The notes: generated from the sequence alone by a model not told the origin. Shown: positions 4,180-62,690, numbered from the stretch's first letter. The stretch is 64,000 bases of DNA from Mobula hypostoma (GCF_963921235.1 NC_086101.1:164920001-164984000); one strand, 5' to 3'. Made by a program: numbers and translations.

Positions 4180-4922
4180 AAACTCGAAATCCATGACCTG
4201 TCACCGAGGAGGAGGACAGAAGGACCAAAGGAACACTACCATCTGGTTGGCCCTATGTGGGAGTGCAATACTCCTCCAAGTGACAGCACGCCAGTAGTGC
4301 TTTCATGTGGAGTCCATTAATGAAGAGTGGGGCAGATGATCCATTAGCAAACCTTGGATTTCTGCCATTACCAACAAACCTGTGGATGTCAGAGATTTCC
4401 ACAGTTTCAGTGACTGAGAGCTGGGGATCAGAACTTCTTGATTTGATCACTAAGATCTGACTCACAAGGCAATTTTGCTTAATATACTTCACTCTGGAAT
4501 TTAATTCAAATTCAACACATTAATACCAGTACTTATTGCTCGTCAATAAATTATAAGCACTATCACCTTTCATGGCACTGCTCTGGGCCTATGCGAATGT
4601 GGACACGTAGGACACATTAGCTGGAGTGTCACACACAAAATGCTGGAGGAACTTAGCAGGCCAGGCAGCATCTAAGGAAAAAAGTACAGTCGACATTTCA
4701 GGCCAAAACCCTGCCCAAGTCCTGTCGAAGGATTTCAGCCCAAAAAGCCAACTAATTCAAATATGAGAATAAGGATAAACCCAGCATTTACTGTAAGTGA
4801 TAATGAAGGGTGAGCAATCTTATTTCCAAGTCATAATGTAACTTGGAGAGAATGGGCAGATGGCAGTGTTCCTTTGGTCCTTCTGTCCTCCTCCTCGGTG
4901 ACAGGTCATGGATTTCAAGTTT
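4180..4922. repeat. 66-bp inverted repeat pair (4180-4245 / 4857-4922)
   Basis: aaactcgaaatccatgacctgtcaccgaggaggaggacagaaggaccaaaggaacactaccatctg is reverse-complemented at 4857-4922 with 2 mismatches. Confidence 0.9.
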
Positions 4923-5017
4923 ACTTTTTTCCACAGATGCTGCCTGGCCTGCTGAGTTCCTCCAGCAGTTTGTGTGTGTTGCTCAGATTTCCAGCATCTG
5001 CGGGTTTTTCCTTGTTT
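4628..5017. mobile_element. Palindromic PLE-terminus element with decayed back-to-back hammerheads and an internal insert
   Basis: Left arm acacacaaaatgctggaggaacttagcaggccaggcagcatc is inverted relative to right arm gatgctgcctggcctgctgagttcctccagca. Confidence 0.8.
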
Positions 5018-6859
5018 GTTTAACTGGAGTCCTGGCTGGTTTACTGATCAAAACACTGCACTGCTCACTTACACCACGGTCCTCCGTGGGCAAAAGGAAC
5101 AGAAAGTCCTCCAAGTTCTGGCTGCAAGCCTGATAAAATCTGGAGAAAATTAAACACCTTCCAATCAGGTAATTACTAATGCTCTCTTACTTCGTCTATT
5201 TTATTTTTATTACTAAATGAAATAAGTGATTTGCTCCAGTGATTTACCCTAGTATGTCTTTAACCAACAATTTCAGTGCTCCTTCATTGAGCGTCAGAAA
5301 CAAAAGGCCAAAGTTGGTATGCAGTTTGAGCAATATAAACATGCCAAGCAAGAAGTCCAAAACCCCCAACTACGAAGGTGCCAACAGGCAAAACACTAAC
5401 ACCTAGCAAGCAGAGGGCAGCTAACTCCATTATTTCTTTTCTAAATAATGACAGATGTCATGGACAGGAACTGATCCTATTTGGGTTTTCTTCATGACAT
5501 AATTCTACAACATAAAAAAAACTCATACCTAGAAAAATGGAGGGTATGTGGGAGAGAAGGATTAGGTCAATCTTGGAGTAGGTTAAAAGGTCGGCACAAC
5601 ATGGTGGGCCAAAGGGCCTGTACTGCACTGCACTGTTTTATTTTCCATGATCTACTCCTCTCCACTTCATCTTGTACATTTCCGTTGCTAATTCAAGGGA
5701 GGGTGGGAACCTATGGGAACAAGAGTTAAAACTGCCCTGCCTCTGCTACTGAACACAGTTAATAATGAGCAGCTGAAGTGTTTATCTGGCTGATACTTGG
5801 AGTTAAACATTGTTCTGTTATTCACTTGGTATTCTGAGGCCACTTTAATGGCCAACTTTGGGCACTTCATCTCATAAATCCAACCGGACACACAGCAGAG
5901 ACAGCAAAAGAAAGCACAAGGAATTAAAATTATTATGGATGGAGGCGCAGAAATGAGAGAGAAGGGTTGTGTTACTCTAGATTACATTTGGATGGTTGAT
6001 ACGTAAAATAAAACTAATCTCTCAGAATACATCATCCTGCCAACTATAAGAAAACTGGCTAAAACTCCCTTCAGATATTACAGTCATTTTCAGCTTCATG
6101 GGAACAAAGAAGGAATGAATCAGATAAACACCATTTCCAGTCACGCTGTGTCATTCCAGAAACTTAACCAGACATGAGTCACCTTTGTGCTCCTGACAAG
6201 ATTGCTACATCAAACACACAGGATGATTTCTTTCCCTTTGGCGTGTTGTGGGGAAACTTGAATCACTATCTCCTGGGAACAATCATCTTTGGGTACTCAC
6301 AGGAAAACATGGGAGTCAAAACTGGCTGCCAACTTAGCTTCATTTTTTTTTAAGACTCTTCTCAAAATGACAGTTGATTCTCTTACCAAATACTGATCCA
6401 CCACCTCATATGATTCTTCTGTTTGTACAGCACTGACCACAAAATGGCATTGCACCACACTGCCCAATATCCTTCCCCCATCCATTCATTATTAATGATA
6501 TAGTGAACTCACCCAGCATCTCCTTGCAAATCCAAATACTACTGCCCTTCCAAATACCACTGTTCCAATTCTCATCTGTTCTATCTAACCATTGCTGCCT
6601 CTACTGTCTATATTCATCAATGTGTGCCAGGGAACAAGGTTTCTGCTACACCCTCCACTTCACAGTTAAGCATCAATCAGGCCTGTAATCACTGGTCACT
6701 CTAATTTTCTCAATGACTACTGGGAAGCACATTCAGATGTCAAGAATGTGCAGTACTCAAATGGTTTCCATGGTTTTAGGCCTCTGGTGCACGTTGCAGA
6801 TGCAAACGGGGGATGGGAGCTGGAGGGGTCATTGCTTTCTACTGCTACAGCCACAAGAG

Positions 6860-7775
6860 TGCGCTAGTTTCTCCGCAACCTTTGCTATCTTCAATGGAAC
6901 GCTATCACCAAAAGCATCTTTACCCCACCCCCCGCCCAACTCTCTGCTTTCCACAGATATCTCTCCTCCTATGATTCCTTTGTCCATTTGTCCCTCCACT
7001 AAATCTCCCTGCTGGCACTTATCCCCGTAAGTGGAAAAAGTGCTACACCTGCCCATTCACTTACTCCCTCACCTGCATTCAAGGGCCCAAACAATCCTTC
7101 CAGGTGAGGTAACACTTCAGCAGTGAATCTGTTGGGGTTGACTCCTGCGTCCAATGCTCCCAATGTGGCCTCCTCTCACTGGTGAGATCTGACATAGAAT
7201 GGGGGACTGTTTTGTCGAGCACCTTTGCTTATCTGCAAAGGGCAGGATTTCCTGGTAGCCAACTATTTCAATTCTAACTCCCATTCCCATTCCATCATGT
7301 CAGTCCACGGTCTCCTCTTCTGCCATGATGAGACCACTCTCCGGTTGGCAGAGGAACATCCAGGTAGTCTCCAGTCCGATGGCATGAACAACGATTTCCC
7401 CAACCTCCAGTATATTTTCCTCCTCCTCCTCCACACCTCTTCTTCATTTCCCACTCAGGCCCTCCTCCTACCTCCCCTGGTGCCCCTTCTCCTTCCCTTT
7501 CTCTCATGATCCACTCTCCTCTCCTATCAGATCCCTTCTTCCACAGACCTTTACCTTTTCCACCTATCACCCCCGACCTTCTCATTCCATCCTCTCCCAC
7601 CCCCCCCAACTTTGCTTCACCTATCACTTTCTAAGCTTGTATTCCTACCCCTCCCCCCAACCCCAACTTCTTATTGTGGTATCTTCCCCCTCCCTCTCCA
7701 GTCCTGACGAAGGGTCTCGGCCCGAAACATCAACTGTTTATTCCTTTCCATAGATGCTGCCTGACCTGCTGAGCA
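6860..7775 (+). mobile_element. Penelope-like element 3' part (GIY-YIG remnant, pyrimidine tract, hammerhead terminus)
   Basis: Homologous to 47137-47700 (SHSHSIMSVHGLLFCHDETTLRL). Ends with the hammerhead and the gatgctgcctgacctgctgag terminus. Confidence 0.88.
7699..7736 (+). ncRNA. Minimal hammerhead ribozyme motif, CpG-decayed
   Basis: CAGTC-CTGACGA-AGGGTCTCGGCCC-GAAA-CATC-AACTG. The core is intact, but CGTCGAC has mutated to CATCAAC. Confidence 0.7.
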
Positions 7776-9278: not shown

Positions 9279-12116
9279 GGGTATGTGAACGTATATGAAG
9301 AATTTAAGGCTCATGTCTTTCGTAAAATAAGGAGGCTAATTGTTTTGCACATTTTAACTTCACCTACATAAAATAAGTTAATGATTACTGCAGTTATAAA
9401 ATTTAAATAGAAAATACATTGCAGAATTCCCCTTTACAAATGCAGTACTGACCTTTGTAACTTTAGATTGACCGTAATAGCTGTGGAACACATTTCACAA
9501 CCACTCCAGAGCACACCCAATACTCAGGAGCAACATGGTTTGCATATACTGGGCATATTGGAACATGAACTAACACACCACACTGCATTATAACAGAGTC
9601 AGGAATAAGAGTCAATATTATGTGGTGGATTCCACCTATCCCTGCGGGCACTGGGAAAGTGGAAGCACAGATTCAGTGGAAGGCCCTTCTCTCTGCTTTA
9701 AATAGAGATCCTATCCAAATCGAGTGCTGGAGTGGTACAAACTGTAGGAAAGATGTGTCCTGGTTCTTGGGTTAGGCTGCATGTGTGAACTCATATAATG
9801 AATGCCGATTTATTCAGGGCATAATGGTGAAAAATAATCCTGTTCATCAGTTTCTCAGTAGGGGTCCTCTCCTAATGAACACTCACTGTTATTACTCTTT
9901 GGGAAGTCATTAGGTGCTGATGTTAATTGCAGCACCCATGTCTTCACTATGACTTAGGTTAGCTAACTCAACATAAGTTTAGAAATTAAAACAAGGAAAT
10001 GTCTAGTTCTGTAAACTATTAAGCAACTGAGCTATCAAAACAGAAAGTAACACAGAATTATTTTTTCACCACTGCACACAGAGCCACTGCAGAACATCTG
10101 ATTCCTTTGCGTAGCTTTCTGGCTCCTGAACCAGCGTAGACAGAATAACTTCAGTTACCTCAACACAGAACTGGTTCCACAGCCCATGGACTCACTTTCA
10201 AGGATTCATCGACTCATATTCACAGATTTAATTAATCTGTTTATTTATTCATTTATCTATTATCTGTTTTTTTTTGTATTTGCACAGTTTGTCTTGTTTG
10301 CCAGTCTTTGTGCGTAGTTTTTGGTTGATTACATAGAACAGTACAGCACAGGAAACAGGCCCCTCGACTCACAATATTGTGCCAAAATAATTAAATTAGT
10401 AATCAAATGGCCAACTCACTGACTTCCATTTTGTCTAGACAATGTCCTTGAATTTCTTTGTTTAACGATGTATGGCTGCAAGAAACTGAATCTCAGGGGA
10501 TTATATGGTGGCATACATGTAAATTGATAAGACATTTACTTTGAACTTTGATGTGGACCTCACCAAAGCAAAAGAGAGATGAACAGTATTCATGCCATCC
10601 AGGTTAAGGGTAGCTTTAAAAAAAAACCTGGATACGTATTGGGCTCCCTAACTTTCCAAATGCGTTTTCACCTCCCTCTGATCAGCACTGGAAAAGTGAT
10701 AGGAAGTTCAACAGATTGATCCCTTTGGAAATGCAACATTAGGCAATAAGCCACACCACAATTGTGAAGAATAGATTAAAGCTAATAGTAGCTAATTACC
10801 CAGACTAATGGGTCAGGGTATTCAAGTAGATGAATTGGATTGGTTTCACCCACCACGCCTGAAACAAAGCAGTGGTTTGTCTACATTTACTTCCTTGGTT
10901 TCTATGTGAAGGCTACCCCATGACTACAGCAGTGAATGGTCTTGCTGTGACCTTCCTTTTCTACATGATGTCTGGTCGTTAGACTTTCCCTGGTCACTGT
11001 CACTTCTCCACTTCCTTGATAGAAAATTCTGAGTCATGTTGTTGTCATAGATTAGGCTACCAATTTAGAAACACAATCTGGGAAATATTCTCAAACCACA
11101 CAAGATTTATACTAATCCTACTGTTCCCATATAATTTTATATCTTCACAAAGGAAGTTGTCTTTCTTCATTATGTTAGCCCACTGGGCTGAGCATTTATC
11201 TACTGCTGGCATTGTTCTATTCACTGTAAGCATATTCAGCCACAGTACCCCTTTGCCCATTGGGATTAGTGCTTTACCTTGCTGTGTATTCCTGGCACAA
11301 ACACATAAAAGCTCTCCAGTTATACATGCTGCATTCATTTTCATTCTCTGGGGGCAGATCCATTTCAAGTATCTCTGCTCCATTGCAATTCCCAAGTATT
11401 CATGTACATTACCTCTATACAATGATATTTGTCTCATTTCTTGCCCCTGGTGACATTATCTTTCTGAATCACGGTCAGTTGATCACCCCCCTCCCCTTCT
11501 TGGCCTGAAATTCAGTCTAGCGTAAGATCGAATTTCCACCTTACTCCCCATAGTCCCATCTTTTTCATGGCCTCAAGGTTTTTTCTGATTGTTCCCACTT
11601 TGTGTACATTTAGCTTATCTCTGTTGTACCTATTGGTCCTGAATATACTCCCTGTTATTTATGACAGCATTATTACTATTTTCACATCAGACTGCCATTC
11701 TCAAATTCCCTTGATGAACTCCTTCCTTCCCAAATATCAGAGGACCACAAGATAAATGAATTTTTAAGCCTTATTATTATCATTTGCTTTCATTTCTCAA
11801 GGTAAGTTGCTCCAGCCCCAGAGACAATTTACTATCTTAGTGTCCTTTCAGCATACAAGCCTATCATCCATCCTATGTGCAATCATTATCAGCGTTAAAA
11901 ATCACTGCCTTTTGAACACAACGCAGGCAATCAACACTGTTTGCTCTAAGCATAGTGTAGTGTCTAATGACACAGAGGGAGATCCATCTACAAGGACTGC
12001 GATACAATGCCTGAAAAGGCTTTTTGAAAGTCACTCTTTGTTTTCTCACAGAGCTTTCTGCTTCAAGCATTCCAATGAAAAGGTACTATTCAATCTAAAA
12101 TGAAGGATTTGCATTT

Positions 12117-12211
12117 GTACCTCTTCCTATAGATGCTGCCTGGCCTGCTACGTTCACCAGCAATTTTTACGTGTGTTGCTTGAAATTCCAGCATCTGCAG
12201 ATTTCCTCATG
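12117..12211 (+). mobile_element. 95-bp PLE terminal fragment with 9-bp TSD
   Basis: Reverse complement of the PLE end at 46711-46808. Flanked by tttgcattt at 12108-12116 and 12212-12220. Confidence 0.85.
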
Positions 12212-12664
12212 TTTGCATTTTTAAAGGTTCTTTCACAACTTCAGAATGGCCCGGTAACTTCAGAATTTTTTTTGGATTAAAAAAAACATTGTTTTCGTAG
12301 ATGATCTGATTTCTCAAAGCAAAGTTTACTTGGAGTCCTTTTTTTTAAAACGGGGGACACACATCCTAGGTTCACTGTAACGCCCTCACCTCTGCATTGA
12401 AAGTTATGAACTCAAGTTCCACTCCAGAGACTCCAGGGCCTTCTCTCAAACTGAGTATCAGTCCAGTAATGAGGGAAGCTGCACTGTCAAAGTTCTGCAG
12501 AACAAGATATTAAAATTCAAGGCCCATCTTTCTTTAAGGTAGCAGTAAAAGTTCAAGGGCACTTGAGTATACCAACATAATAAAAAATATTTTTAAAAGC
12601 TTGTTTGTATGAGGATTTGTTTGGAACAGACAGGACTAAATGCCCAACTTGAATTCCAGAGTGA

Positions 12665-13596: not shown

Positions 13597-13930
13597 TGTG
13601 AAACACTCTGAGAAAAGATCAGATCCTACCTACAGTGCAAGATTCAACTTTCAAATGTTTGAAGAGCAGTATTTGATATTTTACAAACTATAGCTCTACT
13701 ACTCCTAGAATATCAGTGTTAAAACATTGTAGAAATTTTAAATGTACAACTCAAACTCTTTAAAAGTATAAATGCACTGACCACTAGGTGAAAAACCAAC
13801 TCCAGATGTTTGAAACACAGTTGGCAAAATGAAAGACAAAATATCTTTAAACTCCTGGGAGCTACAAGTTTGGACACAATGACAGCAGCAATGGGCAGAA
13901 CTGCCACTCAGCTGTCATCGTGACACAAGA

Positions 13931-14420
13931 TTCAAGCAACACACATCAAAGTTGCTGGTGAATGCAGCAGGCCAAGCAGCATCTCTAGGAAGAGGTGCAG
14001 TCGACGTTTCAGGCCGAGACCCTTCGTCAGGACTAACTGAAGGAAGAGTGAGTAAGGGATTTGAAAGTTGGAGGGGGAGGGGGAGATCCAAAATGATAGG
14101 AGAAGACAGGAGGGGGAGGGATAGAGCCGAGAGCTGGACAGGTGATTGGCAAAAGGGGATATGAGAGGATCATGGGACAGGAGGTCTGGGAAGAAAGACA
14201 AGGAGGTGGGGGGACCCAGAGGATGGGCAAGAGGTATATTCAGAGGGACAGAGGGAGAAAAAGGAGAGTGAGAGAAAGAATGTGTGCATAAAAATGAGTA
14301 ACAGATGGGGTACGAGGGGGAGGTGGGGCCTTAGCGGAAGTTAGAGAAGTCGATGTTCATGCCATCAGGTTGGAGGCTACCCAGACAGAATATAAGGTGT
14401 TGTTCCTCCAACCTGAGTGT
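13931..14420 (-). mobile_element. Young PLE 3' fragment, near-identical to 46741-47226, with TSD
   Basis: Very high identity by eye to the 46.7-47.2 kb copy. acaagattcaag is duplicated at 13925-13936 and 14421-14432. Confidence 0.92.
13999..14034 (-). ncRNA. Minimal type I hammerhead ribozyme, intact
   Basis: Minus strand reads AGTC-CTGACGA-AGG gtctcgg CCT-GAAA-CGTC-GACT: stem I AGTC/GACT, stem II AGG/CCT, palindromic ACGT in place of helix III, GUC triplet. Confidence 0.85.
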
Positions 14421-14817
14421 ACAAGATTCAAGTGCTGTGATTCATGTGTTCTCAATCACCAACTTGCTGGAATTCTAGGCAATACTGCAAAGAGTTAAAG
14501 AAATATAGCGTTTTTCCTACAACACCCCGCATTATCTCGACAACTAGTCACTGTTGTTTTCATAACACTCAAACATAAAAATGCTAAGAGCTTATCTTTT
14601 ACTTTTCCGGTGGTTTTATCTTTCCTGAACTTCAGTGAAAGTCTCCTGATTTAACCAATTGGTGTCTGAATTTTTTCATCATATTTTTATAAAATGAACA
14701 ATATTATTAGATGCGAAAACTCAGAAAATTCAAAATAACAACAGCTCATATTATGAATGGCTTGCATTCACCATGGTTTAGTCTTTATATGCAGTTATTT
14801 TATCGTATTTGGGTATA

Positions 14818-17311: not shown

Positions 17312-17389
17312 ATTGTAGGACAATGGAAACCTCTTATTGCAAAGAAAGTTCCATTTTAGCTTGAACTAACAACTTCAAATTCATTATGA

Positions 17390-17570
17390 AAGCAACACAT
17401 AAAATGCTGAAAGGTCTCGGCCCAAACCATCGATGGTACTCTTTTCCATCGGTGCTGCCAGGCCTGCTGAGTTCCTCCAGCACTTTGTATGAAACATCAA
17501 AATGTCAGGCAACATCTATGGAAATGAATTAACAGTTGATGTTTTGGGCTGAGACCCTCCTGCAGAACTG
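17390..17570. mobile_element. Scrambled inverted PLE-terminus fragments
   Basis: Alternating orientations of the aaaatgctg / ggcctgctgagttcctccagca terminus, with two decayed hammerhead halves. Confidence 0.65.
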
Positions 17571-20918: not shown

Positions 20919-20954
20919 AGTCGACGTTTCGGGCCAGAACCCTTCGTCAGGACT
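20919..20954 (-). ncRNA. Minimal hammerhead ribozyme, intact core
   Basis: Minus strand reads AGTC-CTGACGA-AGGGTTCTGGCCC-GAAA-CGTC-GACT. Confidence 0.82.
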
Positions 20955-21893: not shown

Positions 21894-21929
21894 AGTCCTG
21901 ACGAAGGGTTCCGGCCCGAAACGTCGACC
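21894..21929 (+). ncRNA. Minimal hammerhead ribozyme, intact core
   Basis: AGTC-CTGACGA-AGGGTTCCGGCCC-GAAA-CGTC-GACC. Confidence 0.8.
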
Positions 21930-24915: not shown

Positions 24916-25413
24916 TTAAAAATTCTGTTTCAGGCACTGCTGTCTATGGAATCACTAGGGAGAGGCATGACATGTTGAAAATACATACATTAGAGACCTT
25001 ATGTCTTAAGGTCATTTTATCTTTCAAGGAAGGAACCATGAACAATGCACATTGTATACAAGATCAGGTTAGCAGTGGAGTGCTGCTCTTGAAAAAGAAA
25101 CGCACATGTTTTGGAAATCTTGACAGCCTGTGTAATGATGAGAGCAAACTTCAACAAGCCCCACAAATCACCTGAGGGCAGTCCTGGATACAAAACAATC
25201 GGGTAGTAATTTGCTGCTGAGTTGGTTTAAACGGATGTATATACGATACCACCTTACAACAGTTGTTCTGATTGAATGACAGCAGAGTTACTATCAACGT
25301 GGACAACAGCAGAATTTAAAATTGCATTACCAAGTTTATCCTTCCTAAAAAATAAAGCATTCCTAAGTGGTCTATGGAGGTATAGTGACTAATCCCCATG
25401 AAGTAAAACTTAC

Positions 25414-34314: not shown

Positions 34315-34442
34315 AACAACAGGAATTCTGCAGATGCTGGAAATTCAAGCAACACACATCAAAGTTGCTGGTGAATGCAGCAGGCCAGGTAGCATCTCTA
34401 GGAAGAGGTACAGTCGACGTTTCAGGCCGAGACCCTTCGTCA
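34315..34442 (-). mobile_element. 128-bp PLE terminus with hammerhead core and 13-bp TSD
   Basis: Near-identical to 46711-46841. ggcaaaggcaata occurs at 34302-34314 and 34443-34455. Confidence 0.9.
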
Positions 34443-34539
34443 GGCAAAGGCAATATTTTATTTTATAAGTTACAACATTCTCTCTCGTGACCAATGCTGG
34501 CCAAACTCCTGCGTGTTTCTAGTGGTGTCTGTTTATATC

Positions 34540-37424: not shown

Positions 37425-37554
37425 TCACCAACGCAAGAAATTCTGCAGATGCTGGAAATCCAAAGCAACAGACACAAAATGCAGTATGTCAGGCAGCATC
37501 TATGGAAATGAATAAACAGTCAATGTTTCAGGCTGTGATCCCTCTTCAGGACTG
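37425..37554 (-). mobile_element. PLE terminus with hammerhead variant
   Basis: Minus strand 37554-37517 reads CAGTC-CTGAAGA-GGGATCACAGCCT-GAAA-CATT-GACTG. Confidence 0.75.
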
Positions 37555-40149: not shown

Positions 40150-40741
40150 AAACAAGGGCAAATCTACAGATGCTGGAAATCCAAGCAACATATACAGAAT
40201 GCTGGAAGAACTCAGTAGGCCAGGCAGCAACTATGGCAAAAAGTACAGAAGCCGTTCCTGGCCAAGACCCTTCAACAGGACAGAAGAAAAAAAGATGAGG
40301 AGTAGAGTTAAGAGGTAGGGGGAGGGGAGGGAGAAAACAAGGTGATAGGTGAAACTGGGAGGGGGAGGGGTGAAGTAGAGCTGGGAAGTTGATTGGTGAA
40401 GGAGATATACGGCTGGAGAAGGGGGAATCTAATAGGAGAGGAGAAGACAGAAGGCTATGCAAGAAAGAAAATCAGGGAGAAGTACCAGAGGGAGGCAATA
40501 GACAGGCAAGGAGTTAAGTTGAGAGAGGGAAAAGAGGATGGGGGCTTGTGATGGGGGGAGGGAGGGACATTACCAAAAGTTCGAGAAATGGATATTCATG
40601 CCATCAAATTGGCGGCTACCCAGACGGAATACAAGGTGTTCCTCCTCCAACCTGTGTGTGGCCTCATTGCGAAACGTCGACTGTACTCTTTTCCATAGAT
40701 GCTGCCTGGTCTGCTGAGTTCCTCCAGCATTTTGTGTGTGT
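40150..40741. mobile_element. PLE fragment with inverted short terminus
   Basis: Minus-strand PLE 3' end to about 40668, then plus-strand gaaacgtcgactgtactcttttccatagatgctgcc...tttgtgtgtg. Confidence 0.82.
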
Positions 40742-45937: not shown

Positions 45938-46808
45938 TATGTGCGTAGTGTTCTCTGATTGTGTGTGAGCTTGGAGAAGGCGACTCGTTGGATGAGATTA
46001 AGAATCTGGCACCCACACATTGCCCAGTGCACTGGTCCTAATGTAACATAAGTGGAACATCGCTTCACTGAACAGACAGGCAGCAGGGCGATCAATAATC
46101 TCCCATATTGTGAAGGATCTTCCTAAGTCAGTGATCGTAAATGATGCAGCATGGAAACAGGCTTCTCTGCCCACAAAGTCCACTCCGACCAGTAGAAGCA
46201 ATAATGCATTGCTCGGGGTTTTGTTGGGAGGTGAACCAAGCTTCACATTGATAGGGCAATGTAGGGATGACCTGAATCTAGACGTCTTTCTGTCAGCTGC
46301 TGGCAAAGATTCAAAGTTTCAAAGTGCATTTATTATCAACAAATGTATAAATTATACAACCTTGAGATTTGTTTGCTTAACAGGCAGTCGAAAAGCAAGG
46401 AACCCAGAAGAACCCAGTTAAAAAAAATAAGACCAACACCATGTGCCCCCCCCCAAAAAAAAAACACAAAACAGATCATGCAAACAATAGAAGCAAGCAA
46501 CAACAGGCAGTGGATGAACCTCTGAAGTCTCACAAAGGCATTAACTCTTTGAGAGGACTAGCTACTGAAGCAAAAGAAATGCTCAATTGTTTTCAAGGTC
46601 TGCACTTGGTAGACTTATGTCGAACTTCTGGTCCTGCGGTTTGCATGGTTTGCCTGATGATACGACTTGCTCTCTTTTGGACAGGAAAAGGTGGGTCTTC
46701 AGCAAGTAACAAACAACAGGAATTCTGCAGATGCTGGAAATTCAAGCAACATGCATCAAAGTTGCTGGTGAACGCAGCAGGCCAAGCAGCATCTGTAGGA
46801 AGAGGTGC

Positions 46809-46844
46809 AGTCGACGTTTCAGGCCGAGACCCTTCGTCAGGACT
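46809..46844 (-). ncRNA. Minimal type I hammerhead ribozyme, intact
   Basis: Minus strand reads AGTC-CTGACGA-AGG gtctcgg CCT-GAAA-CGTC-GACT, identical to 13999-14034. Confidence 0.85.
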
Positions 46845-47136
46845 AACTGAAGGAAGAGTGAGTAAGGGATTTGAAAGTTGGAGGGGGAGGGGGAGATCCA
46901 AAATGATAGAAGACAGGAGGGGGAGGGATAGAGCTGAGAGCTGGACAGGTGATAGGCAAAAGGGGATACGAGAGGATCATGGGACAGGAGGTCCGGGAAG
47001 AAAGACGGGGGGTGGGGTGACCCAGAGGATGGGCAAGAGGTATATTCAGAGGGACAGAGGGAGAAAAAGGAGAGTGAGAGAAAGAATGTGTGCATAAAAA
47101 TGAGTAACAGATGGGGTACGAGGGGGAGGTGGGGCC

Positions 47137-48498
47137 TTAGCGGAAGTTAGAGAAGTCGATATTCATGCCATCAGGTTGGAGGCTACCCAGACGGAATATA
47201 AGGTGTTGTTCCTCCAACCTGAGTGTGGCTTCATCTTTACAGCAGAGGAGGCCGTGGATAGACATGTCAGAATGGGAATGGGATGTGGAATTAAAATGTG
47301 TGGCCACTGGGAGATCCTGCTTTCTCTGGCGGACAGAGCGTAGATGTTCAGCAAAGCGGTCTCCCAGTCTGCGTCGGGTCTCGCCAATATATAAAAGGCC
47401 ACATCGGGAGCACCGGACGCAGTATATCACCCCAGTCGACTCACAGGTGAAGTGATGCCTCACCTGGAAGGACTGTTTGGGGCCCTGAATGGTGGTAAGG
47501 GAGGAAGTGTAAGGGCATATGTAGCACTTGTTCCGCTTACACGGATAAGTGCCAGGACGGAGATCAGTGGGGAGGGATGGGGGGGACGAATGGACAAGGG
47601 AGTTGTGTAGGGAGCAATCCCTGTGGAATGCAGAGAGAGGGGGGGAGAGAAAGATGTGCTTAGTGGTGGGATCCCGTTGGAGGTGGTGGAAGTTACGGAG
47701 AATAATATGTTGGACCCGGAGGCTGGTGAGGTGGTAGGTGAGGACCAGGGGAACCCTATTCCTAATGAAGTGGTGGGAGGATGGAGTGAGAGCAGATGTA
47801 CGTGAAATGGGGGAGATACATTTAAGAGCAGAGTTGATAGTGGAGGAAGGGAAGCCCCTTTCTTTAAAAAAGGAAGACATCTCCCTCGTCCTAGAATGAA
47901 AAGCCTCATCCTGAGAGCAGATGCGGCGGAGACAGAGGAATTGCGAGAAGGGGATGGCGTTTTTGCAAGAGACAGGGTGAGAAGAGGAATAGTCCAGATA
48001 GCTGTGAGAATCAGTAGGCTTATAGTAGACATCAGTGGATAAGCTGTCTCCAGAGACAGAGACAGAAAGATCTAGAAAGGGGAGGGAGGTGTCGGAAGTG
48101 GACCAGGTAAACTTGAGGGCAGGGTGAAAGCTGGAGGCAAAGTTAATAAAGTCAACGAGTTCTGCATGCGTGCAGGAAGCAGCGCCAATGCAGTCGTCGA
48201 TGTAGCGAAGGAAAAGTGGGGGACAGATACCAGAATAGGCACGAAACATAGATTGTTCCACAAAGCCAACAAAAAGGCAGGCATAGCTAGGACCCATACG
48301 GGTGCCCATAGCTACACCTTTAGTTTGGAGGAAGTGGGAGGAGCCAAAGGAGAAATTATTAAGAGTAAGGACTAATTCCGCTAGACGGAGCAGAGTGGTG
48401 GTAGAGGGGAACTGATTAGGTCTGGAATCCAAAAAGAAGCGGAGAGCTTTGACACCTTCCTGATGGGGGATGGAAGTATATAAGGACTGGACATCCAT
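47137..48498 (-). CDS. PLE reverse transcriptase / GIY-YIG endonuclease, N-terminally truncated
   Basis: DVQSLYTSIP (motif A), QTKGVAMG (motif B), RYIDD (motif C), FLDL, YKPTDSHSYL, Cys linker CKRNKCYIC and VIYCVRCSRCGLLYIGETRR. Confidence 0.93.
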   Translation of the reverse strand: MDVQSLYTSIPHQEGVKALRFFLDSRPNQFPSTTTLLRLAELVLTLNNFSFGSSHFLQTKGVAMGTRMGPSYACLFVGFVEQSMFRAYSGICPPLFLRYIDDCIGAASCTHAELVDFINFASSFHPALKFTWSTSDTSLPFLDLSVSVSGDSLSTDVYYKPTDSHSYLDYSSSHPVSCKNAIPFSQFLCLRRICSQDEAFHSRTREMSSFFKERGFPSSTINSALKCISPISRTSALTPSSHHFIRNRVPLVLTYHLTSLRVQHIILRNFHHLQRDPTTKHIFLSPPLSAFHRDCSLHNSLVHSSPPSLPTDLRPGTYPCKRNKCYICPYTSSLTTIQGPKQSFQVRHHFTCESTGVIYCVRCSRCGLLYIGETRRRLGDRFAEHLRSVRQRKQDLPVATHFNSTSHSHSDMSIHGLLCCKDEATLRLEEQHLIFRLGSLQPDGMNIDFSNFR

Positions 48499-48720
48499 GG
48501 TGAAAATAAAGCGGTGGGGGCCAGGGATTGCTCTTCAGAGCGTAGAGGGATGAATCAATGATGATATCTGTAGCAGTTGAATCTGGATCATTCAATAGTG
48601 GCTCAAAACATTTCTTCCATCTGGCTCTGGAATCTTTCCTGAAGGAGCATCAACCTATTCGCTTGGCGTGCTGTGGGCGCTAAATGGTGGTCTGAGGAAA
48701 GCACCTCACGTCACACTTAC

Positions 48721-52505: not shown

Positions 52506-52559
52506 GCAGCCTGCCTGTGAATGATAGTCCTCGCAGCCTGCCTGTGAATGATAGTCCTC
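52506..52559 (+). repeat. Perfect 27-bp tandem duplication
   Basis: gcagcctgcctgtgaatgatagtcctc x2. Confidence 0.95.
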
Positions 52560-55381: not shown

Positions 55382-55520
55382 TCCTTGCCGTAATAGGGAG
55401 ACTTTCAATTTGCATTAGAGAGAATATGTCAAGAGAAGTGTCTTTTTTGTAAAATTTTTTAAGGTATTTCCTTTTCCAAGGGTAAGTGGAACAGCCCATC
55501 AGCATTTCCAAGATTAGTCA

Positions 55521-56316
55521 CGAACACAATAAAGTCTGCAGATGCTGGAAATCCAAAGCAAGGCACACAAAATGCTGAAGGAACTTAGCAGGTCAGGCAG
55601 CATCTATGGAAAACAGTAATGAGTTGATGTTTCAGGATGAGACCCTTCTTCAGAACTGGAAAGGGAGGAGGAAAATGCCTGAATAAAAAGGTGGGAAGGA
55701 GGGGAAAGAGGCTAGATGAAAGATGAAAGGTGATAGGTGAAGCCAGGTGGGCAGGGAAGGTCAGGGACAGCACGAAGAAAGAATCTGAGAAGGAACAATA
55801 GGAGAAAGGAAGGAGGAGGGGACTCAGGGAGAAGTAATAAGCAGATGAAAAGAAGTAAAAGATCAGAGTGGGGAATAGAGGAAGGGCAGGGGATAAATTG
55901 GTAACAGGAAGGAGAAATTGATATTCATGCCATCAGGTGGGAGGATACCCAGATGGAATACAAGGTGTTGCTCCTCCACCCGGAGGGTTGCCTCATCTTG
56001 GAACAAGAGAAGGCCATGGATAGACATGTCAGAATAGGAATGAGAATCGGAATTAAAATGTTTGGCACCGGGAAGTCACACTTGTGGCAGATGATGCAGT
56101 GGTGCTCGACGAAGCAGTCCCCCAATTTGCGATGGGTCTCACCAACGTAGAGGAGACCGCATTGGGAGCACTGGGCACAATAGATGATCCCAGCAGATTT
56201 GCAGGGGAAGTGTTGCCTCACCTGGAAGGACTGTTTGGAGCCCTGAATGGAGGTGAAAGAGGTGGTGTACGGGCAGGCATACAACTTAGGCTGCTTGCAG
56301 GGATAAGTGACCGCGT
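55521..56316 (-). mobile_element. PLE 3' part nested in Gypsy pol, with 9-bp TSD
   Basis: ORF 55925-56332 reads IIYCAQCSQCGLLYVGET. gattagtca occurs at 55512-55520 and 56317-56325. Hammerhead at 55622-55657. Confidence 0.88.
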
Positions 56317-58539
56317 GATTAGTCATCCTCATGAATTCAATCTTGCTAATTGTGTCCTCCAGGGAACAGAGCCCATCTCTGCATTCGAGCTGCTGCTGTT
56401 AGTGGAACACCCTTCTGTGGAATGAAAATGGACGATAGTGGTTGATGATCAGCAATGAGGGTAAACTCACTTCCATACAAGTACTGGCTGAAACGTTTTA
56501 TACCCCAAACCAGACTCAATGTCTCTCTATCAATCTGCGTGTAAGTTTTCTCTGCAGCAGTAAGGGAACATGATGAAAAGCTATGGGGCATTTACTTCCA
56601 TCACCCATAACATGTGACATGACTGCACCTATACCATAAGATGAGTCGTCACAGACAAGATTCACTGGATGACGTGGATCATAATGTGTGAGTAGTGTCT
56701 GATGGCACTATTTTCTTTGCATTTTGGAAAGTCACCTCACACTGCTTTGTCCATTGCCATTTCTTTCCGATGTATAGTAATGAGTTCAAGGGCTAGAAGA
56801 GTAGCCAGATTTGGCACGAACCTGGTATAGTAATTGACAAATCGTAAAAAGGACCACAACTATGACACATACTTTAGCCTTGGGACATCTTCCTCTCAGC
56901 TCACTTGTGTAATCCTTGTGCTTTGATGGTCTGACTACAGTAAGTGAAGCTTGATTTAAAGAATTCACACTTGTTACGTCATGCTCAGAGCCCATAATCT
57001 TCTAATATTTTTAATGCTGTCTCGAGATTTTGGAGATGTTCCTTGTCATCGGCACCACTATCAATGATGTCATCCATGTTACACTGAGGGCCAGAACAGC
57101 CCTGGAGCACTTGGTCTATAGCGTTCTGCCAGAGTGTAGGTGCAGAAGCTACTCCAAATATAAACTTATTAAAGCGATAAACCCCTTTGTAACTGTTTAT
57201 GGTGAGAAACACTTTGGACTCTTCTTCCATCTCCATCTGTAGGTAGGCCTCACCTTAGTACACTTTACTGAAGTGTTTCGCTCCAGAAAGTTTTGTAAAG
57301 ATATCCTCTAACTTTGGCAGAGGGTATTGATCTACTTTCAGTACTGAGTTGATGGTTACCTTAAAATCACCACAGATCCTGACCGACCCATTCTTCATTG
57401 CCCATGGGCTCCACTCAACCTTGGAAAGAATTTCTTCAGCCTCCATGCAATCTAGCTCACTGGCTACTTCATCATGGATGGTATATGGAACCAGGCGGCT
57501 AAAGTAAAACTTGGGGTGGCATTTTTATTTAACATAATTTTACCCTTGATATGTTTGAGTTTTCCAATGCCATCCTTGAATATTGCTATGGCATCATCCA
57601 GTACCTTTCTTAATTTACTTTCAGTCAACTTTATTGCAGGAAATGTGGCATGCAAATGGTGGATGGATCTCCAATAATGTTGTAGTTGTCTCAGCCAATC
57701 ACAGCTCCACAATGCTGCCCCTCCTGTTTTTAGCACATGCAAACCCAATGTGGCTTGCTAGTTATCCCATTTCACTATTATGAATGTTATTCCCACAGGA
57801 GTTATTTTTTTCTCCAGCACAAGTTCTTAGTTGGATATCTGCAGGCTTCAGTTCAATATCTTTGAAATGCCATTCAAACGCATTTTGTGGAATGACTGAA
57901 GCAGACAAGCCAGTGTCCAATTTCTTTTTAATAAATATGATATTCTTTGTCCATATTGTTTGTCTACTGTTAGTTTTCACATTGTAAATCACAAAGCTAT
58001 CCAGTCCTGAGTCACTTTCATCATTATTAGATTTCTGATCAACAGTATGCAGATTAGGGCTCTTTTTTGCAAGTTAATGTAACTTGACTTTTTATCTTTT
58101 TCTCTTCCCTGTGCAGTCTATCTATCAGGGTCTCAGTTGTGTTCCTTGATCCCACTGCACTTTGAACTTTCAAAATTTTCATGGCATTTCCCTGTCATCT
58201 GTTCACTCAAATATTAAGATCAACATTCAAGGAATCTACTTTCTGAAGCTTCACGAAGTCTCTTTAATTACTGCTCAAACAATGGACTCTGCTGGAGTCT
58301 CATAATTAACCAATAAGGAATGGTTTTGTGAAAAGCTCTATTAGCCAATCAGAGACTCTTTTTTTTAAGCTTCCCATTGCTGCCCTGCCTCTTGCTTCTC
58401 ACGACCATCTGTAGAAGAATCTGCGGTTTCCAACTTGGTTTCAATAGTCACTTCAAAAACCCAGAAAACTAGAGTGAAAGTAATTCCAAGGAAGAATTTC
58501 CATGAGAAAGGCCAAGAACCTCTTGATGACCTTCATCTC

Positions 58540-58850: not shown

Positions 58851-60617
58851 GAGCAATGGAGAGTCTCAAAAACACATATTATATAAAGATTTGTGAATAG
58901 AACGCATGAACATTTAAGCTGGCTCTACCCATACAAAAAGATAGAGATCTTATGATAATATCTTCATAACAGGATTCAATACCTCTGTGACTTAATTAGG
59001 AATTGAGACTTCGTGGAAAGCAATGGGATTATATCATTACTAAAACGCTTCAAATTATGTTAATTATAGCACCTGGAACCTTCCCAACTTGTACTCTGAG
59101 TCATGTGATATAAAGTAATACTCCTGCAGTTAATCTTCCATTGGTTTAAAAACAAAGTACAAAGAATGAAGCCATAAATCGTTTCAATGGCCAAGTGTTT
59201 TTCTGCAAGAGTATGACAAAGGAAAATTCTCTTCTCGTGAGCTTAGAAATGTAGCACAGTAGATTGTCAGTGAGAGCCAATGTAAAAAAAATCATTCTTG
59301 GCACTCGAAAGCTAGTGGAAACATATTTGAATGGTCAGCACTTGAAAAGTACAGGATATGTTATTAAACATGGCAAGAGGAAATGGGTTCTAAAAGTTTC
59401 CATAATATCCGGCAGCACCTACAGCATTTACTTCCTGATCACTGAACCTATTCTGTACGTAACAGTTAGGTTTTCTTTATCACAGCAATCTAATTGGAAA
59501 AGATGACCAGCTGACAGAAAGGAAGGTCAGCTTCTCAAATCCTGTAGTACAAGCAAGTTTTATTTCCAGTGACACCAGTCTAGAATATTTCCCAGAGACA
59601 ACTGCTCTCCAGGCTCTCTACTATTAAATACCATACCTGGCCAAAGGTTCTGCCTCCCATCAGCTCTTCCACAGCAATTAAATAGACTGACTGATCTCAT
59701 TGTCATATGGCTCTGTGTGGCGGGAGTTACGAAGGCAATACAGAATGGTAGTCAGTGCCAATGAGTGTGTTATCATAGAGGAACCACCTCCAACAAGAGG
59801 TGACGGAAGAGCCTAGAGGATATCAGCTGTCTGTCAATACAAGAAGCAGGTGGCGTCAGTGCCCAGGAATTGGCACACTGGCTAGGGAGCAGCTGTTAGC
59901 CTCACAGCTCACTGCCTGGTGGCGACGTTCCTCACCACTCAGCCGACACCAGCCGCTTCACAATGTTTAGTCTGAGTTTTCAGACAAGATGAGTGGAGGA
60001 GAAGAGTTGGAGACAACAATATTAAAGAAAAAATATTGCAGCTGTGAGACGGGATGAGATTTTAGTGGAACAAAATGTTACTGGTTGAATTAATAATGTG
60101 AAGTTATCCTCTTCAATAGAAAACAGAGAAGCAGATTATTTTTGAAGCTGTGAGAGATAGACAGTGCTGCATTCAGTAGGACCACGTTGCTGTTGTACTC
60201 GACTCACCAAAAGCTAACGTGCAGGTGTAGCAAGCATTGAAGACAGACAGTAAGTTTGCCTTTATTACAAGGATATTTGCATAAATGAGTGGAGATATCT
60301 TGCTCCTGTTATTAATGGCTCCAACGGTGGCATCACGTCTAGAATACTGTGTACAGATTTGGTGTCTCCACCTTAGGATGAATAAACTTGCAAAAGAGGG
60401 AATTCGGTAATGGTTCAGCAGGTTGATTGCTGGGATGGAAGATGTGCTCCCAGACTAAGCAGACTGGGCCTCCACCATCTGGAGTTTAGGTGAATGAGGG
60501 ATGATCTCATTGAAACACAAATATTTTAAAAGTGTAACAGGCTAGATACAGGGATAATGCTTCCCTGACTGATTTGTTTTATATTGCAGTATTAAAGGGT
60601 CAACTACTCAAATCTGA

Positions 60618-60911
60618 CCACAAAATAATCTTCAGATGCTGGGGTCAAAGCAACACGCGCAACACGCTGGAGGAACTCAGCAGGTCGGGCAGCATCCGTG
60701 GAAACGAACAGTCAACGTTTCAGGCCGAGACCCTTCATCAGGACTGAAGAGGGAAGGGGCAGAGGCCCCATAAAGAAGGCGGGGAGAGGGTGGGAAGGAG
60801 AAGGCTGGTAGGTTCCAGGTGAAAAACCAGTAAGGGGAAAGATAAAGGGTTGGGGGAGGGGGTAGGCAGGAAAGGTGAAGAAGGTATAGGAGAAAGCACA
60901 ATGGGTAGTAT
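60618..60911 (-). mobile_element. PLE terminus, same subfamily as 20830, with ~10-bp TSD
   Basis: Matches 20830-21130. tcaaatctga occurs at 60608-60617 and 60912-60921. Confidence 0.88.
60709..60746 (-). ncRNA. Minimal hammerhead ribozyme, intact (GUU triplet)
   Basis: Minus strand reads CAGTC-CTGATGA-AGG gtctcgg CCT-GAAA-CGTT-GACTG. Confidence 0.82.
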
Positions 60912-61059
60912 TCAAATCTGAGATGAGAACTTTCAGAATTACTGAATGTTTGGAATTTGGTCACTGATTAGATTCAAAAAGAGATCACTAGGGTTTTCCA
61001 CATGAAGGAAATAAAGGAAAATCGAGACTGGAGGGAAATGTCATCAAGGAAGATCAGCC

Positions 61060-61320
61060 ACTCTCCTCTCCTATCAGATTTCTTTTTCTTCAGCCCTTTA
61101 CCCATTCAATCTACCGCCTTCCAGCTTCTCACTTCATCCCCTCCTCCATCCACCTACCTTCCCCCTCTCCTGGTCCCACCTATCATCTTCCAGTCTCCTG
61201 CTGCCCCCTTACCTTTCACTCCTGATGAAGGGTCTCAGCCCAAATATCGACTATTTATCCCTCTCCATTGATGCTGCCTGACCTGCTGAGTCCCTCCAGC
61301 ATTTTGCATGTGTTGCTCTG
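61060..61320 (+). mobile_element. Older PLE terminus with decayed hammerhead
   Basis: cctgatgaagggtctcagcccaaatatcgact...gatgctgcctgacctgctgag. Confidence 0.75.
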
Positions 61321-62439
61321 CAAAAGATCAGCCAGGACCTCACAGAATGGTGATTCAGTCACAAGGCCTATTCTGCAGCTGGTTTTTATGCTTGCACACC
61401 AGCTTTGTCCTCATGACCTGGGTTAAGCAAACTTCTTTCTTTGAGGCAAAAAAAATGGGAATTGCTTGAAATACCCAGCGAGTTATGCAGTGCCCACGGA
61501 GAGGGAAAAAAAAAGAGTTGATATTTCATGTCAATGAGCAATCATCATGCTTTTTGATTTTCAAACCTGGACCTCTGCCAGGACAGGCTAGTGAAGACAG
61601 ATCAGATCAGCATAATTCTTTAAATCGTCCTCTGAGACTTCCTCGGCAGAGCCACATTGCCGAGTCAAATCTTATAGAAATGAGCAGAATTCTGTTTACT
61701 TTGGGACTCATGTTTGTCAAACTAAAGTGTAAACTGCCAGTAAATCTCGTAGAATTAACCCTACTCAGCCCAAATGCTTTATGTTGATGTTTAGATTCCT
61801 CCAAAGCCTCATCCCTCCTTACTTTATTTTACCCTTCTATAGCATTCCTGCTGATTTCCTCTTAAATACATTCAAATAACCACCTTCATTACTCCACTTG
61901 GCAGCAAATTACAACCTAACACCCTCACTGGGTAAATGCGTTTACCCTCTGGATTCTATTGCATGTTTTCACAAGTAAAATGGTGGAGGCATTTTATGTT
62001 TAAGAAAAAACTATAGCAACACATTTATTAAAGAGCGAATACTAAATACAAAGTGCTGTAAAAATCCTTTACCTTCGCATCAGACCAGCCTCTTAAAGTG
62101 AACCCCAACCCAATGTCAGTGGTTGTGAATTCTGTATGTTTCCACCAATTACATTACCCAACACTATAATCACCTATCTGAATGGAAACTTATTTGCTAC
62201 TTATGATTTTATTATTCTGCTTTGCAAATATTGAAATTATACCTCTAACTCTTGGTGCCTAGATTGCACAATATTTCATTGTAGGCACAACTCTCAGTCC
62301 TGGTAAGTCTATTTTCCCCCAATTTCACCAATGTCTCTGCACAAAATTGAGACTCTGTTTAATAGTAATTGTCCCAGCAGAGGTCCTTTGAACACCCCAC
62401 TTCCCATCTTCCCCAGTGTATGCAATGACTTTTGACCCA

Positions 62440-62690
62440 AAGCAGAAAATGCTGGAAACATTCAGTAGTTCTGTCAGCATCTGTGGAAAGAGAAACAGTT
62501 AATGTTTCAGATCGGGATCATCAGAATTGGTTCTATCCATCTATTCACCAGCTTCTCTCTACTGAAAACCAATTCAATTTTCTCTTTCCCAGTTGTGATC
62601 AAGGGTCTCAGACCTGAAACATTCACTGTTTGCTTTTTCAAAAATGCTGCCCAACTTGCTGAATGTTTCCAGCATTTTCTGTATTTACTT
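62440..62690. mobile_element. Old palindromic PLE-terminus element
   Basis: cagaaaatgctggaaacattcag is inverted against ctgaatgtttccagcattttctg. Decayed aagggtctcagacctgaaac. Confidence 0.7.

What the first reader, a model, noticed from the sequence alone, without database searches (positions are those of the whole stretch)
4628..62690. Dense population of minimal hammerhead ribozymes carried by Penelope termini (about 15 motifs in 64 kb)
Seen: a 36-nt motif, stem I-CTGAnGA-stem II-GAAA-CGTC-stem I'. It is intact at 13999, 20919, 21894, 46809 and 60709. It is nearly intact at 7699, 34411, 37517 and 55622, and decayed near 4680, 4720, 17410, 17540, 40250, 61220 and 62595. Established: CUGANGA/GAAA/NUH is the hammerhead core, and PLEs are known to carry minimal type I hammerheads whose helix III is a short palindrome (here ACGU), thought to act as dimers. 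Inference: at this density the genome would carry a very large number of ribozyme motifs, mostly in short non-coding PLE derivatives.
Basis: partly seen in the sequence, partly recalled or inferred. Interest (0 to 1): 0.8.

Follow-up and report, generated by a model that had tools for sequence, protein, structure and literature searches.

The report
Hammerhead ribozyme motifs in Penelope retroelements
The window holds 17 copies, five of them complete, of the tiny hammerhead ribozyme motif that Penelope-like retrotransposons carry near their ends; the kind is already known, but this ray genome has more than 80,000 intact-looking copies.

Summary
A covariance model and direct reading find 17 copies of a 36-nt motif, AGUC-CUGACGA-A-GGGUCUCGGCCU-GAAA-CGUC-GACU. 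Five are complete. Four keep the catalytic core but have damaged helices. Eight are decayed, mostly at CpG sites. Chance predicts 0.02 strict matches; five are seen.

The motif lies in the 3' part of 5'-truncated Penelope-like elements. Their single ORF encodes a reverse transcriptase and a GIY-YIG nuclease joined by a Neptune-type CxxC linker. The motif sits about 290 nt after the stop codon and about 100 nt before the element's end. A long copy elsewhere in the genome shows the usual partial-tandem (pseudo-LTR) layout.

Genome-wide there are 80,831 intact-core copies against 11 for the control. Both helices covary, including in a coral element.

Cleavage itself is not shown. No raw RNA reads were available. 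Copies starting exactly at the cut site are rare. A subfamily with a dead core still amplified.

One side observation may be new. About half of the element tails sit in single-event head-to-head foldbacks, and the inner ends cluster at the ribozyme's 5' edge.

The parts
46809..46844 (-). Complete minimal hammerhead. The predicted cut is after C at 46813, between 46813 and 46812 on the minus strand.
   Evidence: (63.1 bits)
47137..48498 (-). Penelope-like ORF of 453 aa. It covers the C-terminal part of the reverse transcriptase, the CKRNKCYIC linker and the GIY-YIG nuclease. It is 5'-truncated at about residue 341 of full-length relatives.
46711..48525 (-). The longest Penelope-like copy in the window (1.8 kb, 5'-truncated). 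Its 3' end is at 46711, next to A/T-rich flanking DNA.
   Evidence: loose ends at 46710/46711 in three runs
13999..14034 (-). Complete minimal hammerhead in a 0.5-kb 5'-truncated copy (13930-14429). That copy is 96.5% identical to 46740-47226.
20919..20954 (-). Complete hammerhead with a G10.1-C11.1 pair. It is the left arm (20825-21237) of a head-to-head pair.
21894..21929 (+). Complete hammerhead. It is the right arm (21227-21990) of the same head-to-head pair; the two arms are 94.7% identical.
60710..60745 (-). Hammerhead with CUGAUGA and a GUU cleavage triplet; the core is intact. It lies head-to-head with 61218-61252.
34412..34447 (-). Intact core, but the copy starts at C3, so the 5' strand of stem I is missing. 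The copy is 134 bp long (34311-34444).
7700..7735 (+). Intact core; helix III palindrome decayed to ACAU; position 1.1 changed from G to A. It lies in an older copy, 6912-7773.
37518..37553 (-). Intact core (CUGAAGA); helix III decayed (ACAU, position 17 is U).
55622..55657 (-). Intact core. Stem I reads AGUU/AACU, so pair 2.1-1.1 is kept as U-A. Helix III is decayed. It lies in the copy 55516-56365.
4688..4753 (.). Two decayed hammerheads, 4688-4716(-) and 4718-4753(+), that abut head-to-head. The junction lies inside the motifs.
17409..17569 (.). Two decayed copies, 17409-17431(+) and 17534-17569(-), lying tail-to-tail.
40250..40282 (-). Decayed hammerhead in the copy 40150-40671.
61218..61252 (+). 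Decayed hammerhead; G12 is lost.
62497..62627 (.).
12116..12215 (+). Fragment made of the tail only (the sequence downstream of the cut site). Similar fragments lie at 4922-5017(+), 40671-40741(+) and 42092-42173(-).

Best explanation
Shown: these are genomic copies of the minimal type-I hammerhead motif of a Neptune-like family of Penelope-like retrotransposons in a ray genome. The closest proteins are from Mobula (93% identity).

The unit is about 3.5 kb. It holds one ORF (reverse transcriptase, CxxC linker, GIY-YIG nuclease), then about 290 nt, then the 36-nt motif, then a conserved tail of about 100 nt that ends the unit. In partial tandems the motif of the upstream partial copy therefore also sits about 100 nt before the next unit, which is the pseudo-LTR layout. 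The copies in this window are dead-on-arrival products of reverse transcription, either 5'-truncated or folded back, and they decay mainly at their CpG sites.

Inferred: in the element's RNA the motif forms helices I and II. Helix III cannot form within one motif, because A15.1-U16.1 would have to close a 2-nt loop. The motif therefore needs a second copy, either another RNA or the other pseudo-LTR copy on the same transcript, so that the two ACGU stretches pair with each other. It probably also needs the element's own protein. It would then cut after GUC and trim tandem or read-through transcripts.

Cleavage is probably inefficient and is not needed for insertion: every copy here spans the cut site.
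For: - The motif is far more frequent than chance: 5 matches against 0.02 expected in the window, and 80,831 against 11 in the genome.
- RT and GIY-YIG domains lie on one ORF just upstream of the motif, with hundreds of homologues that carry RT, GIY-YIG and PF26215. All protein-coding copies in the window are 5'-truncated. The linker reads CKRNKCYIC.
- The pseudo-LTR layout is seen in L086: an upstream partial copy ends at 612, its motif is at 479-514, and the full unit follows.
- Covariation on 67 motifs: 87.3% of cells are paired. There are 15 cells changed on both sides, against 4.1+-1.7 in shuffles (0 of 500 reach it). All four helix I pairs change on both sides, and slid controls pair at 55% or less.
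- The same motif sits in the same place in a coral element (L002 3112-3146, with stem I UACA/UGUA and helix II GGGC/GCCC) and in other invertebrate-type loci.
- Between subfamilies the motif stays 0.5-0.9 identical while the upstream flank drops to 0.1-0.4. N7 is the least conserved position of the core box.
- In two other organisms' runs, contigs match only across 46809-46844.
Against: - No Rfam hammerhead model matches, even at E<=10 on a 96-nt stretch.
- No raw RNA reads were available, so neither expression nor ends at the cut site could be seen.
- Predicted folding prefers inactive forms. In the monomer, GACG pairs with CGUC (-10.0 against -6.0 kcal/mol for helices I+II). Between two copies, ACGU.ACGU gives only -1.7 kcal/mol, while a competing GUCGAC duplex gives -10.3.
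- The dominant subfamily has G10.1.U11.1 rather than G-C (27 GU against 29 GC).
- A subfamily with A6 changed to C, a dead core, has 1,181 or more copies with its own helix II spectrum.
- Copies that begin exactly at the cut site are rare: about 110 among some 30,000, against about 30 at a control position.
- Published work on a lizard element found that the hammerhead needs protein and is dispensable for insertion in vitro (PMC11167929).
Confidence: 0.85

Rival explanations
1. The motif is a hammerhead by descent, but in this lineage it no longer works as a nuclease. It would be kept because the same stretch serves another purpose, such as binding the element's protein, starting or stopping reverse transcription, or acting as a promoter or splice acceptor. 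Alternatively it simply rides along with the element.
For: - A dead-core (A6 to C) subfamily amplified.
- There is no marked excess of copies starting at the cut site, and all copies span the site.
- Predicted folds favour inactive forms.
- The ends of cDNA cluster at the motif's 5' edge, which points to a structural role.
- A pyrimidine tract plus CAG directly precedes the motif in all subfamilies.
- Hammerhead mutants of the lizard element still insert in vitro (PMC11167929).
- Related elements without hammerheads proliferate well (PMC8557442).
Against: - All core bases plus covarying helices are kept from corals to rays. A non-catalytic role does not explain this easily.
- N7, the one free core position, is the most variable.
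- The young, dominant subfamilies carry intact cores.
Confidence: 0.2
2. The motifs belong to non-LTR retrozymes: tandem arrays of short hammerhead-bearing units that give circular RNAs and are mobilised by Penelope-like elements.
For: - Retrozymes are reported in one cartilaginous fish and are related to Penelope pseudo-LTRs (bioRxiv 10.64898/2026.07.22.740005).
- A few direct pairs 275-493 nt apart appear among the first 100 genomic hits.
Against: - The window has no tandem array of hammerhead-bearing units.
- The copies are dispersed, 5'-truncated from an ORF-bearing element, or inverted.
- The motif lacks the canonical helix III and the loop contacts of retrozyme hammerheads.
Confidence: 0.03
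3. The matches are chance occurrences of short core strings within an unrelated repeat.
For: The core boxes are short, and Rfam models do not detect the motif.
Against: - 5 matches against 0.02 expected, and 80,831 against 11.
- The helices covary.
- The same motif sits at the same place in distant phyla.
Confidence: 0.01

Closest known systems
Minimal hammerheads of Penelope-like elements (Cervera & De la Pena 2014, PMC4209133)
   Same: They lie in the pseudo-LTRs. They are type I with a short open helix I, an unpaired nucleotide after A9, and no real helix III, only a palindrome (ACGU). They occur mostly as single motifs in truncated copies, sometimes as close pairs on opposite strands. They are massively abundant in some animal genomes.
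   Different: - Helix II here is 4 bp, not the 7-8 bp described for Schistosoma.
- The dominant subfamily has G.U at 10.1-11.1.
- The count (80,831 strict intact-core matches) is roughly ten to twenty times the 'remarkable' coelacanth (about 4,000) and Xenopus (about 9,000) counts of that paper, although the descriptors differ.
Hammerhead of the Anolis Poseidon element PAc (PMC11167929)
   Same: The motif lies between the end of one unit and the start of the next ORF. The element ends at a site downstream of the motif, which fits reverse transcription that starts at an internal site. The insertion ends carry a 'tail'. Genomic copies span the cut site.
   Different: In PAc the ORF starts inside the motif and the cut site is 26 nt after the start codon. 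Here the cut site is about 100 nt before the unit boundary. The clade is also different: Neptune-type linker here, Poseidon there. Activity was tested for PAc and not here.
Non-LTR retrozymes of animals (PMC7229834; bioRxiv 10.64898/2026.07.22.740005)
   Same: They carry type-I hammerheads related to Penelope pseudo-LTRs, and the hammerheads are thought to act between neighbouring copies.
   Different: Retrozymes are head-to-tail arrays of short non-coding units with canonical hammerheads, and they yield circular RNAs. The copies here are dispersed, truncated from a coding element, or folded back.
Canonical type-I hammerhead (Rfam Hammerhead_1 and relatives)
   Same: The CUGANGA and GAAA boxes, the U16.1-H17 cut site, and helices I and II.
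   Different: There is no helix III hairpin and there are no loop-loop contacts. No Rfam model scores it.

Membership tests
Hammerhead ribozyme (core definition) | C3-U4-G5-A6-N7-G8-A9 box | tested here: met
   Intact in 9 of 17 window copies. There are 80,831 genomic copies with an intact box plus GAAACGTC.
Hammerhead ribozyme (core definition) | G12-A13-A14 followed by A15.1, and U16.1-H17 at the cut site | tested here: met
   GAAA-CGUC in five copies (four complete, plus the 5'-truncated 34412), GUU in 60710, and AUC or AUU in three CpG-decayed copies.
Hammerhead ribozyme (core definition) | Helices I and II supported by compensatory changes | tested here: met
   87.3% of cells are paired. 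There are 15 cells changed on both sides against 4.1+-1.7 in shuffles. All helix I pairs covary. The coral copy has UACA/UGUA and GGGC/GCCC. Caveat: the alignment was fitted to the model, and few independent lineages are represented.
Hammerhead ribozyme (core definition) | Helix III closing the three-way junction | tested here: not met
   Within one motif, A15.1-U16.1 would enclose only C and G. Pairing is possible only between two copies (ACGU.ACGU, -1.7 kcal/mol). This is the defining departure of the 'minimal' class.
Hammerhead ribozyme (core definition) | Site-specific self-cleavage | not testable with these tools
   Only assembled contigs of public runs were available; they show no molecule ends.
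Rfam hammerhead families | Score at or above the gathering threshold of a hammerhead covariance model | tested here: not met
   No hammerhead hit at the gathering threshold or at E<=10, either on the whole window or on 46780-46875.
Minimal hammerhead of Penelope-like elements | Location in the terminal repeat region of an element with an RT plus GIY-YIG ORF | tested here: met
   About 290 nt after the stop codon of ORF 47137-48498. In L086 the motif lies upstream of the next unit. It is also downstream of the ORF in L002, L003, L005, L006 and L007.
Minimal hammerhead of Penelope-like elements | [quoted passage not shown] | tested here: met
   An A in nearly all copies, including the coral and other foreign loci.
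Minimal hammerhead of Penelope-like elements | Conserved G10.1-C11.1 pair | tested here: inconclusive
   G-C in 29 and G.U in 27 of 59 distinct sampled motifs. The most abundant subfamily has G.U.
Minimal hammerhead of Penelope-like elements | Palindromic positions 15.2-16.2 | tested here: met
   ACGU in all intact copies. It is lost only through CpG decay, to ACAU or AUGU.
Penelope-like element, Neptune-type | [quoted passage not shown] | tested here: met
   RVT_1 and GIY-YIG lie on one ORF, each below Pfam's own cut-off. Homologues at E down to 1e-226 carry PF00078, PF01541 and PF26215. The linker CKRNKCYIC precedes the nuclease. The linker criterion is taken from PMC8557442. No phylogeny was made.
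Penelope-like element, Neptune-type | 5' truncation, partial tandems (pseudo-LTRs), adjacent inverted truncated copies, and a tail at one end | tested here: met
   The antisense arm of foldbacks lacks the last 35-40 nt of the tail.
Non-LTR retrozyme | Head-to-tail arrays of short hammerhead-bearing units | tested here: not met
   No such array in the window. Close pairs are mostly head-to-head: 8 head-to-head, 2 direct and 0 tail-to-tail within 1 kb among the first 100 genomic hits.

The most novel reading that the evidence does not exclude
The ribozyme's 5' edge may be a preferred end point of Penelope cDNA synthesis.

About half of the sampled element tails are single-event foldbacks, flanked by target-site duplications. 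In 17 of 23 scored pairs the longer arm stops at motif positions 1-6. In addition, 10 of about 26 simple copies also begin at positions 1-11.

Either the template RNAs start there (by transcription or processing), or the folded, protein-bound motif stops the reverse transcriptase. The enzyme would then turn back on its own cDNA.

On this reading the hammerhead shapes the inverted-repeat architecture of these elements, besides or instead of acting as a nuclease.
Probability: 0.3. Interest if true: 0.6.

Novelty: new member of a known kind. Interest (0 to 1): 0.35.

Why it matters
It shows that the 2014 picture of minimal hammerheads in Penelope-like elements holds in a ray, at an unusually large scale: about one intact-core motif every 43 kb, which makes the motif a visible fraction of the genome's repeats.

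This matters for annotation. Public gene models fuse these ORFs to host genes, and one even translates the ribozyme.

The large, young population also gives a natural record of how these elements insert. That record argues that RNA uncut at this site is the usual template, and that a catalytically dead core does not stop amplification. It also shows that insertion often yields foldbacks whose junctions sit at the ribozyme. These points bear on the open question of what the hammerhead does for these elements.

Tried and rejected
- Rfam scans at the gathering threshold and at E<=10, on the whole window and on a 96-nt stretch, gave no hammerhead hit. This is expected for a motif without helix III.
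- The G3/C8 double change in 62591-62627 looked like core covariation. Genome-wide it is at control level (39 against 49), so it is decay, not a family.
- Public runs were all assembled contigs of uncertain kind. Laying four of them showed only that the element is highly repeated, where its 3' end lies, and some head-to-head joints. They gave no evidence on transcription or on RNA ends.
- I looked for a footprint of cleavage among the 5' ends of copies. Ends exactly at G1.1 number about 110, against about 30 at a control position 3 nt downstream, out of some 30,000 copies. This is a weak excess. Nearly half of it is one junction type explained by the AGTC/GACT microhomology of stem I, so it is not evidence of cleavage.
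- A promoter start at the CAG before the motif was considered as the cause of the 5'-edge hot spot. In the subfamily where the CAG lies 4 nt further upstream, arms still end mostly at motif position 1, which speaks against it. A Pol III box-like match in helix II has the wrong geometry.
- Three protein look-ups returned no DNA. The snail locus L004 gave no motif within 1.2 kb.
- A nested dimer fold cannot represent the active dimer, so only the energies of its pieces were computed.


Full report
**Observation.** The strict pattern CTGANGA-N4-30-GAAACGTC occurs five times in the window, where 0.02 is expected from dinucleotide-preserving shuffles. Reading all 16 listed sites on both strands shows the same 36-nt unit at each one: AGUC-CUGACGA-A-GGGUCUCGGCCU-GAAA-CGUC-GACU.

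A covariance model built from nine copies was run over the window without filters. It gives 15 hits at E<0.01. Two further remnants are recognisable by homology in their flanks.

Base-by-base comparison sorts the 17 copies as follows:
- Four are fully intact: 13999, 46809, 20919 and 21894.
- One is intact with GUU at the cut site (60710).
- Four have an intact core but damaged helices. 34412 starts at C3. In 7700, 37518 and 55622, ACGU has decayed to ACAU.
- Eight have lost core bases.

Most of the damage consists of CpG transitions, at C7-G8, C15.2-G16.2 and C17-G1.1.

**What carries the motif.** ORF 47137-48498(-) has reverse-transcriptase and GIY-YIG matches. It also has hundreds of homologues with RT, GIY-YIG and PF26215 domains. 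The closest are from Mobula hypostoma (93% identity), then Hypanus sabinus (76%). The genome is therefore that of a ray.

The linker before the nuclease reads CKRNKCYIC. This is the CX2-5CxxC motif that PMC8557442 gives for Neptune and Nematis elements.

tblastn with full-length relatives shows that every protein-coding copy in the window is 5'-truncated. The longest, 46711-48525, begins at about residue 341. The motif lies about 290 nt after the stop codon. A conserved tail of about 100 nt follows it, and the element ends at 46711 next to A/T-rich DNA.

One long copy elsewhere in the genome was used only to read the anatomy. In it, an upstream partial copy ends at its tail (position 612 of L086), with its motif at 479-514, and a full unit of about 3.5 kb follows directly. 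This is the partial-tandem, pseudo-LTR layout that places a motif on both sides of the ORF, as published (PMC4209133, PMC8557442).

**Is it a hammerhead?** The core boxes, the open 4-bp helix I, the 4-bp helix II, the unpaired A after A9 and the ACGU palindrome all fit the published minimal descriptor. Three lines of comparison support the structure.
- Covariation. On 67 motifs from this genome and from foreign loci, 87.3% of cells pair. Fifteen cells are changed on both sides, against 4.1+-1.7 in shuffles (0 of 500 reach it). All four helix I pairs covary, and slid controls reach at most 55%.
- Distant relatives. A coral element whose protein is about 50% identical carries the motif 160 nt after its stop codon. 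Stem I there is fully exchanged (UACA/UGUA) and helix II reads GGGC/GCCC. Other loci show GCU/AGC, UUC/GAA and CUUC/GAAG.
- Conservation between subfamilies. The upstream flank is 0.1-0.4 identical and the motif 0.5-0.9. The least conserved positions are N7, 11.1 and the CpG sites.

No Rfam model detects the motif. This fits the absence of a helix III hairpin.

**Scale.** The pattern CTGANGAAGGG-N4-10-GAAACGTC matches 80,831 times in the 3.48-Gb assembly, against 11 for the reversed control. That is one match per 43 kb. A 17-nt tail anchor matches 62,679 times. The protein search gave 25,105 first-look candidates for the N-terminal half, many of them with long open frames. The family is therefore young. 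I single out no copy.

**Function.** Nothing here shows cleavage. The only public runs are assembled contigs.

Predicted folding favours inactive forms. The ACGU.ACGU helix is worth only -1.7 kcal/mol.

The record of genomic copies argues that the usual template is uncut at this site, for two reasons. All copies span the site. Copies that start exactly at G1.1 number about 110, against about 30 at a control position, among about 30,000.

A lineage with A6 changed to C has 1,181 strict matches and its own helix II spectrum. By contrast, U4-to-C variants (956) mirror the main family and are scattered point mutants. A dead core therefore did not prevent amplification.

This agrees with the lizard element, whose hammerhead needs protein and is dispensable for insertion in vitro. 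My reading is a weak processing module for tandem or read-through transcripts that depends on a partner copy and on protein. The main rival is that the motif is kept for a structural role.

**Side observation.** Head-to-head pairs are common.
- In the window: 4688/4718, 20919/21894, 60710/61218 and 62497/62591.
- Among the first 100 strict genomic hits: 8 head-to-head, 2 direct and 0 tail-to-tail pairs within 1 kb.
- Among 61 tail-anchored copies fetched from one contig: at least 31 are tight foldbacks.

Their junctions differ in detail, so they are separate events. Target-site duplications of 9-15 nt flank whole foldbacks: 10 of 31 foldbacks and 20 of 61 copies overall, against 1.2% in controls. 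Each foldback is therefore a single insertion event.

In 17 of 23 scored pairs the longer arm ends at motif positions 1-6. Ten of about 26 simple copies also start at positions 1-11. One junction type alone occurs 1,009 times. One pair is a perfect palindrome centred on ACGT.

Inverted truncated copies are a known Penelope trait. I did not find their concentration at the ribozyme's edge in the papers read. The sample is small, comes from one contig, and was partly classified by eye.

First-stage notes of this scan report similar foldbacks elsewhere in this genome.

Noticed in passing
G000 loci L008-L016 and L021-L080; in the window 4688-4753, 20825-21990, 60613-61320 and 62497-62627: About half of the element tails lie in tight head-to-head foldbacks flanked by 9-15-nt target-site duplications. 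The longer arm mostly ends at positions 1-6 of the hammerhead motif. Many simple copies also begin there. The cause is unknown: an RNA 5' end, or a stop of the reverse transcriptase followed by turn-back.
   Followed up: partly
window 46845-46860(-), 7680-7699(+), 21877-21893(+), 60746-60762(-), 55658-55675(-): In every subfamily a pyrimidine tract plus CAG directly precedes the motif (for example CCCTCTTCAG|TCCTGA and CTTCCTTCAG|TTAGTCC). It looks like a 3' splice site. In Drosophila virilis Penelope the intron is reported to end at the 5' end of helix I (PMC4209133). No RNA data were available to test this.
   Followed up: partly
window 46711-46808(-) and the equivalent tails (for example 55516-55621, 37425-37517): The conserved tail holds a 9-bp inverted repeat, CAGAUGCUG...CAGCAUCUG, enclosing about 50 nt. 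It is predicted as a stem in 8 of 8 tails, but without compensatory changes. It may be the site where reverse transcription starts.
   Followed up: partly
G000 genome-wide; examples L027, L039, L046, L077: An older subfamily carries CUGCUGA (A6 changed to C, a catalytically dead core). It has 1,181 strict matches and its own helix II variants.
   Followed up: partly
L001 3179-3214, L005 3577-3612, L006 3443-3478, L007 3712-3747: Four of six Penelope loci from other organisms have CCGANGA (U4 changed to C) in an otherwise good motif. In this genome that variant is only 1.2% of copies. Whether it is a family-level state elsewhere was not examined.
   Followed up: no
proteins P0002, P0004, P0012: Public annotations name Penelope ORF fragments as isoforms of host genes (divergent protein kinase domain 1C; chitinase domain-containing protein 1). 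The C-terminus of P0012 is a read-through translation of the hammerhead (…LMKGLRPKRQ…).
   Followed up: no
window 25316-25843(-): An open frame of 175 aa matches the LHFPL (lipoma HMGIC fusion partner-like) family strongly (E 8.6e-37). It is probably a host-gene exon, so the repeats lie around or within an LHFPL-type gene.
   Followed up: no
window 57445-57585(+): A full-length but sub-threshold match to the H/ACA snoRNA family SNORA66 (31.7 bits; gathering score 45).
   Followed up: no
window 39165-39433: A tandem array of six copies of a 45-bp unit, 83% matching.
   Followed up: no
window 479-1066(+): An open frame with a weak match to the Tc3-type transposase helix-turn-helix domain. It is probably a Tc1/mariner remnant.
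   Followed up: no
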